Virus record (IMG/VR): IMGVR_UViG_3300027896_000967
Span: 1 to 10,258 of that record
Strand: one strand, 5' to 3'
Length of the DNA: 10,258 nucleotides
Shown: positions 352-10,258 of the stretch, one piece after another
How positions within the stretch are numbered: the stretch's first letter is position 1
Layout of the letters: each line of letters opens with the position of its first letter
The notes under the pieces: generated by a model
What the model was told of the DNA's origin: nothing
Seen by the model: only the letters and a program-made list of their open reading frames with translations
Database searches by the model: none
Position numbers and translations under genes: made by a program

Positions 352-2163
352 TTATATAAATTCATTTAAAATAAAAGGCTTTGAATGATTGTCAATGACG
401 ATTCCCTTATCATATTCTCTAGATAGATTTTTCGTTACATATTCTACTCTAACCGTTCCATCTTGAATACCTTTTGAATATCGTGATTTTTTAGTTAAAA
501 ATTGGTTTTGAATGTATTTACCTTCAGACAATTTGATTGCATCTTTTTTAATTCCTTTAATTTTAATTTCATCATTAAAAACATAATCTTTATTTCCATT
601 ACATTTTAAAGTGCCACAATCTACTAGTTTTAATGATCCTAATACTTTTTCATCTACTTTTCCGAATTTAAGTAAATTATCATATCCAATTTGATTTACG
701 AAAATTGAATCGGTATCACAATAATAGAAATTTCCATCTCCTGCAATCATCATAAATTCCCATAATAATCTTCTAGCATAAGATGTAACTGCACTAGAAA
801 TTATTGGTATCGAATCTTTAGAATAATCACCATCAATTTTTTCTGATATGTAAAGATCGTTTCCTATCCGTGTTTTTTCGTCTATTTTGAATGTTCCTAT
901 ATCGGACATTATTTTGAACCATAATTCTTTAACTTTTTCATCAGTTATCATCTTAGTTTCTGTAGATTTCCGTTGGGCAAATTTACCATATAAACTATTT
1001 AATATTTTCTTAGCCATATATTGTATGCTTTTATTTGCAGAATTTTGTTTAATATTATAAAAGAAATCTACGAAACTTTCAAAAATCTTTTCTTGTTTAT
1101 ATGCAACTAGACGATTTACTTTAACAATTTCTCCGATTTCAGGATGATTCAAAATATATTCTATTTCTGGGGAAGTTATTATCTGTTTGAATTTACCTAT
1201 TGGAAAAAGTAATTTATCTCGTTTAGTTGCAATAAAAGGTTTCTTGAGATTTAAGTTACAATCGGCTAAAAGAAATAAATCTTTTGAAATGGATTCTTTA
1301 AGATCATCTATTGAGCAATTAATTATAGGAGTATTTGATAATGGAATTGTAGGATACTTAAATGATTTCATAACAAATGGATACATAGAATTAACATCTA
1401 AATTATATATATTATCAGCTTTTTCAAATATAAAAGTTTCATTTCTGCCTCCACGGTAACTAGCTTTTTCCATATCTAATATTTCTTGATATGTATGGAT
1501 TAAAAGATTCGTATGCAAAAATCTATGACGAAATGCCGTCATAGATTGACCGGCTAAAGTTTTCTTAAAACATCCTAAGTCATTTTCTTTAAGAAATTGA
1601 ATATAATATTTCATAACAGTAGCTAAAACTTGAGTATCACGAATATTATAAGGTATTAATTCTTGATCGGTTGATGTCCTAAAATCTGGAGAATCCATTT
1701 TACTAATTCCAAATGTTTTACCCAATTCTTTAAGAGAATCACTAAAGAAATTTGTGGATGAAATAAAAGATATATTTCCAGCTTCACGAATAAAAACTGG
1801 AGAAATAACATCCATATCTAAAACTAAATGTCGTGAAGATAAATATGAATCTAATTTTAATATAGCATAATCATAAGCCATATTATGAGCAATGACATAC
1901 AATTTTTTCTTAGGATATTCGATGGCAAAACGATCCAATAAATTCCAAAAATCATTAACTGTCTTAAGCGAATATCCAGTTTCCGTCCAACTTTCAATAT
2001 AAGTATTTGTCTTGAATAAATGTATTGCATAACCTAATCTAAAAGTTTGTTCCTCATATTTAGTAGATTTTTTAATAAATGCTTCGGTATCTACGATAAG
2101 TAAATTGGATGGTGATTCCGTGCTTTCATTATGCTTAAGATAATGATTGAATCTATTGCTCAT
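352..2163 (-). CDS. polB: Protein-primed family B DNA polymerase (pPolB), 603 aa
   Basis: ExoI IVDTE, ExoII HNMAYD, ExoIII YNIRD, SYRGGRNE (YxGG), motif A DVNSMYP, motif B KKILNSLYGKFAQ, TSYAR (Tx2AR), motif C YCDTDS, KDY and KIKGI. Insertions between motifs A and B and after motif B sit at the TPR1/TPR2 positions typical of phi29-like polymerases. Confidence 0.97.
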   Translation of the reverse strand: MSNRFNHYLKHNESTESPSNLLIVDTEAFIKKSTKYEEQTFRLGYAIHLFKTNTYIESWTETGYSLKTVNDFWNLLDRFAIEYPKKKLYVIAHNMAYDYAILKLDSYLSSRHLVLDMDVISPVFIREAGNISFISSTNFFSDSLKELGKTFGISKMDSPDFRTSTDQELIPYNIRDTQVLATVMKYYIQFLKENDLGCFKKTLAGQSMTAFRHRFLHTNLLIHTYQEILDMEKASYRGGRNETFIFEKADNIYNLDVNSMYPFVMKSFKYPTIPLSNTPIINCSIDDLKESISKDLFLLADCNLNLKKPFIATKRDKLLFPIGKFKQIITSPEIEYILNHPEIGEIVKVNRLVAYKQEKIFESFVDFFYNIKQNSANKSIQYMAKKILNSLYGKFAQRKSTETKMITDEKVKELWFKIMSDIGTFKIDEKTRIGNDLYISEKIDGDYSKDSIPIISSAVTSYARRLLWEFMMIAGDGNFYYCDTDSIFVNQIGYDNLLKFGKVDEKVLGSLKLVDCGTLKCNGNKDYVFNDEIKIKGIKKDAIKLSEGKYIQNQFLTKKSRYSKGIQDGTVRVEYVTKNLSREYDKGIVIDNHSKPFILNEFI

Positions 2164-2641
2164 ATTTTTGTCCTATATAAGTTTTGATTACTGATCCATC
2201 TATCGCATTGTAAATTCGCAATATCTTCAACTTAATTGGCGATCCACCTTTTGCGTATTCATCTCTAGTACGGTTGAATAAATACTTTTTATTCGTTTCA
2301 TTCATTTCAAATAATTCCTCTGATGTCATTGAGAATCGTCTAAACTCATTTCCATATTTTGATTGCATTAAATAAATATATTTATTCGGTCTTACTCCGG
2401 TTCGTTTAAAATCAGATTTAGTCGCCTTAGTTACAGTAGTTTTTTTCTTATATTCTTTTGGAAAACTTACTTTCAAAACAACATAGTCTTTAACAGCTTC
2501 GGTGTCCTTCTGACTATGCCATTTTCTAGTAGTTATCCAATGTCCAGATTCATCTCTAGCGACAGAATGTAGCCCATTTTTCCATTTTTCTCGCTTTATT
2601 CGAATCGTGGGTGGCGTGGCTAGAGTTGAGGATTTCGCCAA
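2153..2641 (-). CDS. Basic protein, candidate terminal protein for pPolB priming (162 aa, TTG start uncertain)
   Basis: Lys/Arg-rich, many Ser/Thr/Tyr, directly upstream of polB and overlapping its start by 11 nt. The function is inferred from position only. Confidence 0.6.
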   Translation of the reverse strand: MAKSSTLATPPTIRIKREKWKNGLHSVARDESGHWITTRKWHSQKDTEAVKDYVVLKVSFPKEYKKKTTVTKATKSDFKRTGVRPNKYIYLMQSKYGNEFRRFSMTSEELFEMNETNKKYLFNRTRDEYAKGGSPIKLKILRIYNAIDGSVIKTYIGQKYEQ

Positions 2642-4097: not shown

Positions 4098-4517
4098 TCA
4101 CTTAAAAGGTAAAAAATTTCCTAAAATATATCCAAATGGTAATGCAGTTAAAATTCCTATTATTATATAAAAAACCATTTGTTTAAATTCTGCATTTTTT
4201 AATCCTGAAACCAAATCTTTTACAATGTGCTGATTCATTATTTGATCCCATAGTTTAGGAGAGAATTGTTTTTTAGTATGGTCAAAATCAATTTGACCTT
4301 CCTGTAAATCTACAAAATAATGAAACTTATTTCTTGAACGGTATGCAGGTTTAGTAGAATCAAATTTCATTCTATTATTTTTCGGCCCAACTAATGAAAC
4401 ATTTACTGGAATTTTTTTAACTTTAGTTTGAGTTAAAATTCCTCCTTTCATTTTAACATAATGTAAAACATTTTTATCCTTTCTTGAAAATAATCTATCT
4501 AAAAATTCGGATTCCAT
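4098..4517 (-). CDS. Basic protein with C-terminal transmembrane anchor (139 aa)
   Basis: C-terminal MVFYIIIGILTALPFGYILG; SD GAAGTGA 4 nt before ATG; lies in the ATPase operon. Confidence 0.82.
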   Translation of the reverse strand: MESEFLDRLFSRKDKNVLHYVKMKGGILTQTKVKKIPVNVSLVGPKNNRMKFDSTKPAYRSRNKFHYFVDLQEGQIDFDHTKKQFSPKLWDQIMNQHIVKDLVSGLKNAEFKQMVFYIIIGILTALPFGYILGNFLPFK

Positions 4518-8194: not shown

Positions 8195-8413
8195 ATGGAT
8201 TATATAGTTATTATAGGAGCAATAATAGCTTTCAGCTCTTTTTGTTCAATAACTAGAAAAGGTTTTTCAACGAATGTTTTTATGGCATCATTTGCAATAT
8301 CCATTATGATATTGATATGGAAAAATATGTTGCCAGTATTTTCAGTAATATTTGTAATAATCATAACAATAGGATTGTTATTCTCAGCAAAAAAAGGTGA
8401 AGATATTGAATAA
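8195..8413 (+). CDS. Small 3-TM membrane protein (72 aa)
   Basis: Almost wholly hydrophobic with a charged tail; directly follows the adhesin and resembles its C-terminal anchor. Confidence 0.8.
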   Translation: MDYIVIIGAIIAFSSFCSITRKGFSTNVFMASFAISIMILIWKNMLPVFSVIFVIIITIGLLFSAKKGEDIE

Positions 8414-8870: not shown

Positions 8871-9107
8871 GTGATAACCGATTCATTGTTAATTTATTTT
8901 CTAGGACAGATCGTATTGCTAATAATTAATATTATTGCATATACGAAAATACCATATATTTCTATAATAGGAATAATGGGAGATTTAGCATTAGCGGCGG
9001 ATACAATCATAGCATTTGGAAATTACTATCTTATTGCAGTAATTCTAATACTTACAAATACAATAATTCCATTTTTATCAATAGCTAAAGCAGTAAGAGG
9101 TAGGTAA
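8871..9107 (+). CDS. Small multi-TM membrane protein (78 aa)
   Basis: GTG abutting the upstream stop, SD GAGGGT, hydrophobic throughout with basic tail KAVRGR. Confidence 0.8.
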   Translation: MITDSLLIYFLGQIVLLIINIIAYTKIPYISIIGIMGDLALAADTIIAFGNYYLIAVILILTNTIIPFLSIAKAVRGR

Positions 9108-9310
9108 TGACATTTGAAGATCAAATGTTCACAATATTAATGTTTGGAGGAACATATTTTTTTGTAACTACATTTCTATCAACTATGAAAGATGAATATA
9201 AACATTATAAAATATGGTCTAATGAACATCCAAATTTTATAATAAAGGAATTGAACAAACAAAAAATTGAACGGATGAAATTATATGAGCATTTTCAAAA
9301 ATCTAGTTGA
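9107..9310 (+). CDS. Hypothetical protein with N-terminal hydrophobic segment (67 aa)
   Basis: TAATG overlap, SD GAGGT, segment MFTILMFGGTYFFVTTFL. Confidence 0.72.
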   Translation: MTFEDQMFTILMFGGTYFFVTTFLSTMKDEYKHYKIWSNEHPNFIIKELNKQKIERMKLYEHFQKSS

Positions 9311-9455
9311 ATCAGTTAATAATTGGATCGACAATTATAAAATGATAAGAGATAATAAAACTGATTTACTAATGAAAAAATTAGGTTATCCAGATTACAG
9401 AAAACATATTTTAGAGGAGGAATTTAAACGATTACAATTAAAATCACAAAAATAA
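9285..9455 (+). CDS. Hypothetical basic helical protein, 56 aa (not in ORF track)
   Basis: Manual translation MSIFKNLVESVNNWIDNYKMIRDNKTDLLMKKLGYPDYRKHILEEEFKRLQLKSQK. GGATGA upstream; overlaps both neighbours and fills the gap. Confidence 0.7.
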   Translation: MSIFKNLVESVNNWIDNYKMIRDNKTDLLMKKLGYPDYRKHILEEEFKRLQLKSQK

Positions 9456-10258
9456 TTTCGTTTTCATTAGTAGCTTTTTTTCTTATTACTACATTTTCTG
9501 GAATCATCAAACCAGTTTCCGCAACACCACCAACAATAACTGCTTATAAAATAAGTCCGACTAATGCTTTATCTGGAACAGAAATTTTGTGTTGGCTTAC
9601 TTATACCGATGCAGACAACGATCCTCCAAATTATGTTAGATGTGAACGGTCTACAACACCAGGAACATCGGGATTACAACCGCCAGTAAATAATATGATT
9701 GCTAACGATAGTGGAGATGTAACTTATACCGATGGAAAACAATATTATTTCAATTGGTTTTATTTTCCATTTGTAGGAACCGGATTCATATTATTTATGG
9801 TTCAATCTGGAGCTGATGCTCAAGTAACTAAATTTGTTGTTTGTTTTCAACAAGTAGAAATAATATTATCTCATTTAGGAGTTACTCCTGCGAATAATAA
9901 TGCAGGAAATCATACATTTTTTGCTAATTATACTGATACATTTAATAACCCTCCGAATTATTTATATGTATATATAAATGGAATATCTTATTCAATGAGC
10001 AAGAATAATTCTAGCGATACTCATTTCGTAATCGGAGTAGACTATTTTTACACTTCATATCTTTTAGAAGGTAATAATACATTTGCATTTAAAGCTCAAA
10101 TGTATTATACAGTTGTGGGAAATCCAATATATTCTGGAACATTCTGGATCAAAATTCATAATGATACCGCAAATAATAATGTATTTCTAGTTTTAATTGT
10201 CGCTTCTTTACTTAGTATATTTATTATACTAATAGTTGCGACACGAAAAAAGGAGTAG
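9428..10258 (+). CDS. Type I membrane glycoprotein with two tandem Ig-like repeats; probable non-canonical start (ACG 9428 or ATT 9431)
   Basis: The frame is open from 9428, after TAA 9425-9427, and encodes the signal peptide TITIKITKIISFSLVAFFLITTFSGIIKPVSA. SD GAGGAGG at 9414-9420; repeats TYTDADNDPPNYV / NYTDTFNNPPNYL; C-terminal TM followed by RKKE. Confidence 0.8.
   Translation, partial: TITIKITKIISFSLVAFFLITTFSGIIKPVSATPPTITAYKISPTNALSGTEILCWLTYTDADNDPPNYVRCERSTTPGTSGLQPPVNNMIANDSGDVTYTDGKQYYFNWFYFPFVGTGFILFMVQSGADAQVTKFVVCFQQVEIILSHLGVTPANNNAGNHTFFANYTDTFNNPPNYLYVYINGISYSMSKNNSSDTHFVIGVDYFYTSYLLEGNNTFAFKAQMYYTVVGNPIYSGTFWIKIHNDTANNNVFLVLIVASLLSIFIILIVATRKKE

What the first reader, a model, noticed from the sequence alone, without database searches (positions are those of the whole stretch)
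9414..9586. Signal peptide with no ATG/GTG/TTG: strongest case for non-canonical initiation
Between the in-frame stop (9425-9427) and TTG 9587 there are 53 sense codons encoding a typical signal peptide ending in VSA and the start of repeat 1, but no canonical start codon. A strong GAGGAGG lies 7 nt before ACG and 10 nt before ATT. A protein starting at 9587 would lack its export signal and begin mid-domain. Alternatives are a ribosomal frameshift from the overlapping 56-aa ORF (A ATT TAA AC region) or a single ATG-to-ACG sequencing error or mutation.
Basis: seen in the sequence. Interest (0 to 1): 0.66.

Follow-up and report, generated by a model that had tools for sequence, protein, structure and literature searches.

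The report
Viral surface-protein gene lacking a normal start codon
A conserved, exported surface protein of an uncultured freshwater archaeal virus has lost the usual start codon, and the sequence suggests it is still made, at a low level, from an ACG or ATT codon just behind an unusually strong ribosome-binding site.

Summary
After the stop at 9425-9427 come 53 in-frame sense codons with no ATG, GTG or TTG before TTG 9587. Homologues show these codons are coding. They encode a 31-32-residue signal peptide (two Lys, hydrophobic helix, Val-Ser-Ala cleavage motif) and the first two beta strands of domain 1.

All nine homologues with readable DNA start with ATG (eight) or TTG (one) behind a Shine-Dalgarno (SD) site, so the loss is specific to this lineage.

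GAGGAGG (9414-9420) is the longest SD in the virus. It uses two rare GAG codons of the overlapping 56-aa ORF. ACG 9428 sits at the virus's typical spacing (7 nt; own genes 5-9). ATT 9431 sits at 10 nt.

Three assemblies in two haplotypes share the sequence, so an assembly error is unlikely. No raw reads were available.

No in-phase slippery heptamer and no RNA structure supports a frameshift.

Best reading (about 0.55): SD-directed initiation at ACG 9428 or ATT 9431, giving a type-I membrane protein with two Ig-like domains. Main rival (about 0.22): a recent start-codon loss that silences the gene.

This is a new member of a known kind and of modest interest. Nothing shows that translation starts here.

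The parts
9414..9420 (+). Shine-Dalgarno site GAGGAGG, inside the 3' part of the upstream 56-aa ORF, where it codes Glu-Glu-Glu as GAG GAG GAA
   Evidence: It is the longest SD match in the virus. GAG is rare (20 GAG against 133 GAA in the window's genes). AGGAGG occurs only twice in the window on both strands.
9425..9427 (+). In-frame TAA that closes the frame upstream of the gene
9428..9430 (+). ACG, candidate start codon, 7 nt after GGAGG. This is the spacing typical of the virus's own SD-led genes.
   Evidence: aligned spacings of nine SD-led genes are 5-9 nt, mean about 7. Homologues of this gene show 4-8 nt, with one at 11.
9431..9433 (+). ATT, candidate start codon, 10 nt after GGAGG. 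It is a table-11 start codon and gives a 31-residue signal peptide.
9428..9523 (+). Signal-peptide coding region: n-region with two Lys, hydrophobic helix, Val-Ser-Ala before the predicted cleavage site
   Evidence: Homologues have signal peptides of 28-34 residues with the same -3/-1 pattern and the same mature N-terminus.
9524..9853 (+). Mature N-terminus and Ig/FN3-like beta-sandwich domain 1 (model strands from residue 36 to 142)
   Evidence: Domain 1 against domain 2: 27% identity, E 5e-5.
9587..9589 (+). TTG used by gene callers as the start (223-aa product). It has no SD in front and lies after two strands of domain 1.
   Evidence: (P0003).
9860..10156 (+). Ig/FN3-like beta-sandwich domain 2
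10166..10258 (+). C-terminal transmembrane helix, short basic tail and TAG stop (10256-10258)
9285..9455 (+). Upstream 56-aa ORF, hydrophilic, with its own ATG. It overlaps the target gene by 28 nt and contains the target's SD.
   Evidence: (also called in the ENA contig).
9893..9893 (+). A/G polymorphism (Asn156/Asp156 of the target protein). It is the only difference between the two haplotypes within the window.

Best explanation
The gene at 9428/9431-10258 is a real, intact gene of a ~12.9 kb protein-primed archaeal virus. The virus is probably spindle-shaped. In its relatives the gene starts with ATG or TTG. In this lineage the start has mutated, most simply ATG to ACG at 9428-9430.

The inferred mechanism runs as follows:
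- The small ribosomal subunit binds GAGGAGG (9414-9420) on the polycistronic mRNA.
- That binding places ACG 9428, or after a 3-nt shift ATT 9431, in the P site.
- Initiator Met-tRNA pairs with this near-cognate codon at a few percent or less of AUG efficiency.
- The product is a 275-276-residue preprotein. Its 31-32-residue Sec signal peptide is cut after Val-Ser-Ala.
- The mature protein is a glycosylatable type-I membrane protein with two Ig-like domains and a C-terminal anchor, probably a low-copy virion or cell-surface protein.

Shown here: the anatomy, the homology, the SD placement and the agreement of the assemblies. Inferred: that initiation happens, which of the two codons is used, and the low expression level.
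For: - No canonical start lies in the 53 codons, yet they are homologous coding sequence.
- Nine homologues have ATG or TTG 4-11 nt after an SD at the equivalent place.
- This gene has the longest SD of the virus, built from rare GAG codons. ACG lies at 7 nt, the centre of the virus's 5-9 nt range. ATT lies at 10 nt.
- The 276-codon frame is intact in a 29% GC genome, and all 26 invariant family residues are kept.
- It is the only gene of the window with BLASTP-detectable relatives in the related elements, so it is the most conserved gene of the module.
- The same start region occurs in JGI, ENA and Logan contigs in two haplotypes, at depth about 14.
- TTG 9587 has no SD and would truncate domain 1.
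- In E. coli, AUU/AUA/AUC/CUG start at 1-2% of AUG and the remaining 57 codons at 0.1-1%; ACG gave recoverable protein with an N-terminal Met (bioRxiv 10.1101/063800).
- About 30% of putative alternative start sites in Haloferax ribosome profiling were near-cognate codons (PMC7261190).
Against: - There is no direct evidence of translation. No RNA run holds the sequence, and only contigs, not reads, could be laid.
- The non-canonical codon is not conserved: every relative has ATG or TTG. The only sequences sharing it are 99.99% identical, so the state may be very young.
- The strong SD would be there whether or not the mutated start still works.
- Retained non-canonical starts are very rare: 1 AUG-to-AUU switch among 61,358 reconstructed AUG starts, and no ACG listed among the switches quoted (PMC5622118).
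- Archaeal aIF1 destabilises initiation complexes on non-AUG mRNAs (PMC6237735).
- The host is unknown.
Confidence: 0.55

Rival explanations
1. Recent loss of the start codon with no meaningful translation. The gene is a null allele, a young pseudogene or a defective variant, and the intact frame and SD are leftovers.
For: - All relatives use ATG or TTG.
- The two haplotypes differ by only 1-2 bases in up to 10 kb, so there has been no time for decay to show.
- The only polymorphism in the window is a non-synonymous change in this gene.
- Switches to non-canonical starts are almost never retained (PMC5622118).
Against: - It is the most conserved gene of the structural module across elements of 29-54% GC, so a null allele should be costly.
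- The allele is nevertheless the consensus at depth about 14 and in two haplotypes.
- All other genes of the contig are intact.
- Near-cognate codons behind a strong SD are leaky rather than silent.
Confidence: 0.22
2. A -1 ribosomal frameshift from the 56-aa ORF (frame of 9285) into the target frame, making a fusion whose signal sequence is internal.
For: - The ORFs overlap by 28 nt, and the target frame is -1 relative to the 56-aa ORF.
- Two places allow perfect re-pairing of a single tRNA-Lys: the A-run at 9440-9443, and the A-run at 9449-9452 directly before the TAA stop.
Against: - No X XXY YYZ heptamer is in phase. The TTTAAAC at 9423-9429 is out of phase for this ORF.
- No stable structure lies downstream: z-score 0.25 for 9400-9540.
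- The SD is 19 and 28 nt from the two A-runs, outside the 10-14 nt that stimulates -1 shifts in dnaX (own knowledge).
- All homologues begin with their own Met directly at the signal peptide and have no N-terminal extension.
- No Rfam element was found.
Confidence: 0.07
3. Termination-reinitiation. Ribosomes finishing the 56-aa ORF at TAA 9453-9455 restart at the overlapping ATA 9452 or at ATT 9455, giving a 23-24-residue signal peptide.
For: ATA 9452 is in frame and overlaps the stop in an ATAA arrangement analogous to the common ATGA coupling. The first 8 codons being open in frame is not in itself significant in this composition.
Against: - The product would lack the two basic residues that nearly all homologues have (the TTG-start homologue has one), and it would be shorter than their 28-34-residue signal peptides.
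- The SD is 31 nt away.
- ATA is itself non-canonical.
Confidence: 0.06
4. Sequencing or assembly error: the true sequence has ATG.
For: A single base change would create ATG, either C to T at 9429 or T to G at 9433. Only contigs, not raw reads, could be inspected.
Against: - JGI, ENA (MEGAHIT) and Logan assemblies all give the same bases.
- They represent two haplotypes that differ elsewhere.
- Depth is about 14, and no other letter is listed at 9429 or 9433.
Confidence: 0.03

Closest known systems
AUU-initiated genes of E. coli (infC, pcnB)
   Same: A near-cognate start codon is used behind an SD and gives low-level translation. ATT is an accepted table-11 start.
   Different: The AUU of infC is conserved and serves IF3 autoregulation (own knowledge). 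Here the codon is not conserved in relatives, and the presumed host is an archaeon, which has aIF1 rather than IF3. ACG fits the spacing better than ATT.
ACG-initiated viral proteins of eukaryotic viruses (AAV VP2, Sendai virus C'; own knowledge)
   Same: A viral protein needed in small amounts is made from ACG with initiator Met-tRNA. Archaeal initiation factors are of the eukaryotic type.
   Different: Those cases use 5' scanning and Kozak context. Here the site is set by an SD inside a polycistronic mRNA, and nothing is known of the expression level.
Programmed -1 frameshifting (dnaX, IS elements, phage tail chaperones)
   Same: There are overlapping ORFs in the 0 and -1 frames, A-rich runs and an SD-like element upstream.
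   Different: There is no in-phase slippery heptamer, no downstream structure, the wrong SD distance, and no fused homologues.
Spindle-shaped archaeal viruses with protein-primed DNA polymerase (His1/Halspiviridae, NSV1/Thaspiviridae, metagenomic methanogen viruses; PMC9796341)
   Same: The window has a protein-primed PolB and a Zot-like ATPase, a large protein, small two-helix membrane proteins and an exported membrane-anchored protein. In relatives the target gene follows a His1_capsid-type gene and a large protein.
   Different: No capsid protein of the window itself matches His1_capsid. The ~12.9 kb contig is 29% GC and from fresh water. No other gene is BLASTP-similar to the relatives.

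Membership tests
Sec-type (signal peptidase I) signal peptide | Basic n-region at the N-terminus | tested here: met
   Two Lys lie in the first 10 residues from either candidate start, as in nearly all homologues (the TTG-start homologue L021 has one).
Sec-type (signal peptidase I) signal peptide | Hydrophobic h-region of about 10-20 residues | tested here: met
   The best 10-mer has Kyte-Doolittle hydropathy 2.56. The AlphaFold2 model has a helix at residues 3-24.
Sec-type (signal peptidase I) signal peptide | Small neutral residues at -3 and -1 of the cleavage site | tested here: met
   Val-Ser-Ala precedes Thr-Pro-Pro-Thr and aligns with the (V/A)(S/T/A)A motif of all homologues.
Sec-type (signal peptidase I) signal peptide | Score from a trained predictor (SignalP or equivalent) or experimental cleavage | not testable with these tools
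   No signal-peptide predictor was on hand.
Genes with a near-cognate (non-ATG/GTG/TTG) start codon | No canonical start between the upstream in-frame stop and conserved coding sequence | tested here: met
Genes with a near-cognate (non-ATG/GTG/TTG) start codon | Ribosome-binding site at working distance from the proposed codon | tested here: met
   AGGAGG lies 7 nt before ACG and 10 nt before ATT. The virus's own range is 5-9 nt.
Genes with a near-cognate (non-ATG/GTG/TTG) start codon | The non-canonical codon is kept among diverged relatives | tested here: not met
   All nine readable homologues have ATG or TTG. Only 99.99%-identical contigs share ACG-ATT.
Genes with a near-cognate (non-ATG/GTG/TTG) start codon | Direct evidence of initiation (N-terminal peptide, ribosome profiling, reporter) | not testable with these tools
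   No RNA run holds the sequence, and only contigs could be laid.
Programmed -1 ribosomal frameshift | Slippery heptamer X XXY YYZ in the upstream ORF's frame | tested here: not met
   TTTAAAC at 9423-9429 is out of phase. Only single-tRNA A-runs exist, at 9440-9443 and 9449-9452.
Programmed -1 ribosomal frameshift | Stimulatory downstream structure | tested here: not met
   For 9400-9540 the MFE is -10.3 kcal/mol with z-score 0.25. No Rfam match was found.
Spindle-shaped archaeal viruses (His1-like) | His1/SSV1-type major capsid protein | tested here: inconclusive
   The two-helix proteins at 8195-8413 and 8871-9107 get no Pfam match. The relative L011:6141-6386 matches His1_capsid at E 2e-6.
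Spindle-shaped archaeal viruses (His1-like) | [quoted passage not shown] | tested here: met
   DNA_pol_B_2 matches at E 2e-33. The best phage-collection hits are archaeal viruses, including Muninn virus.

The most novel reading that the evidence does not exclude
ACG 9428 is a selected, working start codon. On this reading it would be the first natural ACG-initiated gene in an archaeal virus, with the strongest SD of the genome offsetting a deliberately weak start so that a virion or surface adhesin is made in small amounts. A more remote variant is that the C of ACG is deaminated in the mRNA to restore AUG, as in plant organelles. Nothing here excludes either, and nothing here shows either.
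Probability: 0.2. Interest if true: 0.55.

Novelty: new member of a known kind. Interest (0 to 1): 0.36.

Why it matters
- **Annotation.** Standard gene callers cut this protein to 223 residues, removing its export signal and part of a domain (P0003). A homology-guided start at 9428 or 9431 recovers the full exported protein.
- **Biology.** If initiation is confirmed, this would be a natural test case for how far an SD can drive initiation on a near-cognate codon in an archaeal, eukaryote-like initiation system. Data on that are scarce.
- **Viral gene dosage.** It would also be an example of a virus tuning down a conserved surface protein through its start codon.
- **If the gene is silent.** It would then be a snapshot of a structural gene just after inactivation.

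Tried and rejected
- **Searches of viral collections.** Three IMG/VR scans (P0001, alignment A1, the polymerase) found no relatives. tblastn of P0001 against the phage collection found nothing.
- **RNA elements.** Rfam at gathering threshold and ARAGORN found nothing in the window.
- **Reads.** The one sequencing-run search gave a single DNA run kept as contigs. Allele frequencies at 9429 and 9433 and any RNA evidence could not be obtained.
- **Another genetic code.** Rejected: TAA, TAG and TGA all end genes here, and the frame upstream of the TAA is full of stops.
- **Start at TTG 9587.** Rejected: no SD in front and a truncated domain.
- **Start at ATT 9437.** It fits the homologues' Met position best, but it lies 16 nt from the SD core (the AGGAGG match falls outside the 2-14 nt range scanned). 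Judged unlikely.
- I repeated it by reference.

Full report
**What the window is.**
The 10,258 bases are the whole record held for this 'genome', and the tools treat it as a virus record. It is bases 2425-12682 of a ~12.9 kb contig found three times:
- a JGI metagenome contig of 12,895 nt, 100% identical to the window;
- an ENA MEGAHIT contig of 12,969 nt;
- a Logan contig of 12,890 nt from a 2017 freshwater metagenome, at depth about 14.

GC content is 29%. [quoted passage not shown] On the plus strand lie a 1,013-aa protein, several small membrane proteins and the gene in question. The polymerase's best matches in the phage collection are archaeal viruses, including Muninn virus of an Odinarchaeon.

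**The observation.**
It is correct in every detail:
- TAA lies at 9425-9427.
- 53 sense codons follow (9428-9586), beginning ACG, ATT, ACA, ATT, with no in-frame ATG, GTG or TTG until TTG 9587.
- GAGGAGG lies at 9414-9420, 7 nt before ACG and 10 nt before ATT.
- A 56-aa ORF (9285-9455) overlaps by 28 nt in another frame.
- The target frame upstream of the TAA is full of stops.

**Are the 53 codons coding?**
Yes. The word search found eleven related proteins, one of them the 223-aa truncated call from the near-identical contig. In the alignment the relatives carry Met, two basic residues, a hydrophobic stretch and a (V/A)(S/T/A)A motif, followed by a conserved Thr-Ala-Pro-Thr-Ile-Thr mature N-terminus.

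- Window residues 33-53, all upstream of the TTG, are 13-15/21 identical to the closest relatives. The rest of the protein is about 59% identical.
- Signal-peptide lengths in relatives are 28-34 residues. The window gives 32 from ACG 9428, 31 from ATT 9431 and 29 from ATT 9437.
- The AlphaFold2 model built on the alignment has pLDDT 81. It shows a helix at 3-24, two beta sandwiches at 36-142 and 145-243, and a C-terminal transmembrane helix at 247-275.
- Foldseek returns only generic tandem Ig/FN3 matches.
- The two domains are internal repeats: 27% identity, E 5e-5.
- TTG 9587 is residue 54, so a product starting there would lose the signal peptide and two strands. No SD lies in front of it.

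**How relatives start.**
I read the DNA of nine homologues.
- Eight start with ATG. For three of them, gene callers had picked an internal ATG, and the real one lies 14-19 codons upstream.
- One starts with TTG.
- In each case the start follows a GGAG, GAGG or GGTGA-type SD.

The missing canonical start is therefore peculiar to the AT-rich lineage of the window.

**Is it an error?**
This is unlikely. The JGI contig on one side and the ENA and Logan contigs on the other differ at window 9893 (A/G, Asn156/Asp156) and at one base beyond the window. They are identical across 9360-9600. No other letter is listed at 9429 or 9433.

Two caveats apply. Only contigs could be laid, not reads. The three assemblies may also draw on the same or sister samples, so independence is limited.

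**Where would initiation occur?**
I aligned the upstream 30 nt of each gene to a generic anti-SD complement. Nine SD-led genes of this virus place the last G of GGAGG, or its equivalent, 5-9 nt before the start, with a mean of about 7. A tenth match, a weak GATC at 14 nt, was set aside as dubious. The homologues of this gene show 4-8 nt, with one at 11.
- ACG 9428 lies at 7 nt.
- ATT 9431 lies at 10 nt.
- ATT 9437 lies at 16 nt from the SD core.

The target's SD (AGGAGG within GAGGAGG) is the longest in the virus. It is built from two GAG codons of the overlapping ORF, although GAG is used only 20 times against 133 GAA. AGGAGG occurs twice in the window on both strands, with 1.1 expected. The Pyrococcus aEF1A start region quoted in PMC6237735 has GGAGG 8 nt before AUG, so 7 nt and 10 nt both bracket a known archaeal spacing.

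Spacing favours 9428 as the ancestral start position, implying a single T-to-C change. Precedent in prokaryotes favours ATT, which is a table-11 start, and the ORF listing with those starts gives 9431..10258. I cannot decide between them.

**Literature on near-cognate starts.**
- In E. coli, AUU, AUA, AUC and CUG start at 1-2% of AUG and the other 57 codons at 0.1-1%. ACG-initiated GFP was recovered and carried an N-terminal Met (bioRxiv 10.1101/063800).
- In Haloferax ribosome profiling, about 30% of putative alternative start sites were near-cognate codons (PMC7261190).
- aIF1 destabilises initiation complexes made on non-AUG mRNA (PMC6237735).
- Among 61,358 reconstructed AUG starts, only one had switched to AUU, and ACG is not among the switches listed (PMC5622118). 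The same paper reports stronger SDs with weaker start codons.

**Frameshift alternative.**
The target frame is -1 relative to the 56-aa ORF. The TTTAAAC at 9423-9429 is out of phase for that ORF: a tandem -1 slip from TTT-AAA to ATT-TAA leaves a first-position mismatch for both tRNAs. Only single tRNA-Lys slips are possible, at the A-runs 9440-9443 and 9449-9452; the second of these lies directly before the stop.

Several points count against a frameshift:
- The region 9400-9540 has no structure beyond shuffled controls (z-score 0.25).
- Rfam finds nothing.
- The SD is 19 or 28 nt from the two A-runs.
- No homologue carries an N-terminal extension.

I rate it at about 0.07.

**Silent gene alternative.**
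The strong SD and the intact frame would persist for a while after a start-codon loss, and the two haplotypes are too close to show decay. Three observations argue against silence:
- This is the only gene of the window with BLASTP-detectable relatives in the related elements, across 29-54% GC, which makes it the most conserved gene of the module.
- The allele is the consensus in the population sampled.
- The rest of the genome is intact.

I rate complete silence at about 0.22 and working near-cognate initiation at about 0.55. The remainder goes to reinitiation at ATA 9452 or ATT 9455 (which would give a signal peptide without basic residues) and to sequence error.

**Context and function.**
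In relatives the gene directly follows a large protein of 836-995 aa. In one group that large protein follows an 81-aa protein matching His1_capsid. Integrases are present. This is the structural module of spindle-shaped archaeal viruses. Comparable metagenomic viruses with protein-primed polymerases are described in PMC9796341.

The window's own small two-helix proteins (8195-8413 and 8871-9107) get no Pfam match, so membership of that group is inferred rather than shown.

The two-domain module of the target protein recurs 42 times in giant open frames of a Thermoplasmata MAG. That fits an archaeal surface-adhesin origin and an archaeal host. Seven N-X-S/T sequons lie in the mature part.

**Verdict.**
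It is a new member of a known kind: a gene whose only possible starts are near-cognate codons behind a strong SD. Interest is modest. It would rise if initiation at ACG in an archaeal system were demonstrated.

Noticed in passing
window 1 and 10258; L001:1-415 and L001:10678-10839: The window is an internal 10,258-nt piece of a ~12.9 kb contig. A methyltransferase gene lies just beyond window base 1. A 53-aa very basic ORF follows the target gene, and its SD (AGGAG) overlaps the target's TAG stop, 7-8 nt before its ATG.
   Followed up: partly
window 9893: The only difference between the JGI contig and the ENA/Logan contigs within the window is A/G at 9893. It is non-synonymous in the target protein (Asn156/Asp156), in a variable loop of domain 2.
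   Followed up: partly
G001 (Thermoplasmata MAG reached through L024); L025-L027: The two-domain module of the viral protein matches 42 places in giant open frames of 1,700-3,900 aa in one Thermoplasmata MAG. Pfam gives those frames only weak Y_Y_Y, DUF5013 and PKD-like hits. This looks like an unnamed repeat family of archaeal surface proteins shared with viruses.
   Followed up: partly
L004:1703, L005:128, L006:172; L021:2989: Database proteins P0008, P0009 and P0006 are truncated by gene callers at internal ATGs. Their real ATG starts lie 14-19 codons upstream and restore normal signal peptides. One homologue (L021) starts with TTG.
   Followed up: yes
window 8195-8413 and 8871-9107: These are two small proteins of 72 and 78 aa with two hydrophobic helices each, the size and shape of spindle-virus capsid proteins, but they have no Pfam match. 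The relative L011:6141-6386 does match His1_capsid.
   Followed up: partly
window 2153-2641 (-): A 162-aa basic ORF directly upstream of the polymerase gene overlaps it by 11 nt. Its only canonical start is TTG, with no SD. It is a candidate terminal protein, and its start is also uncertain.
   Followed up: no
P0007, P0008, P0009 (L002, L004, L005): Some homologues are about 410 aa long. They carry an extra domain and a multi-helix membrane region in place of the single C-terminal anchor.
   Followed up: no
window 4441-4446 (-): The only other AGGAGG in the window lies inside gene 4098-4517, where it codes Gly-Gly, and is followed by a stretch similar to the one after the target's SD. This is probably chance.
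   Followed up: no
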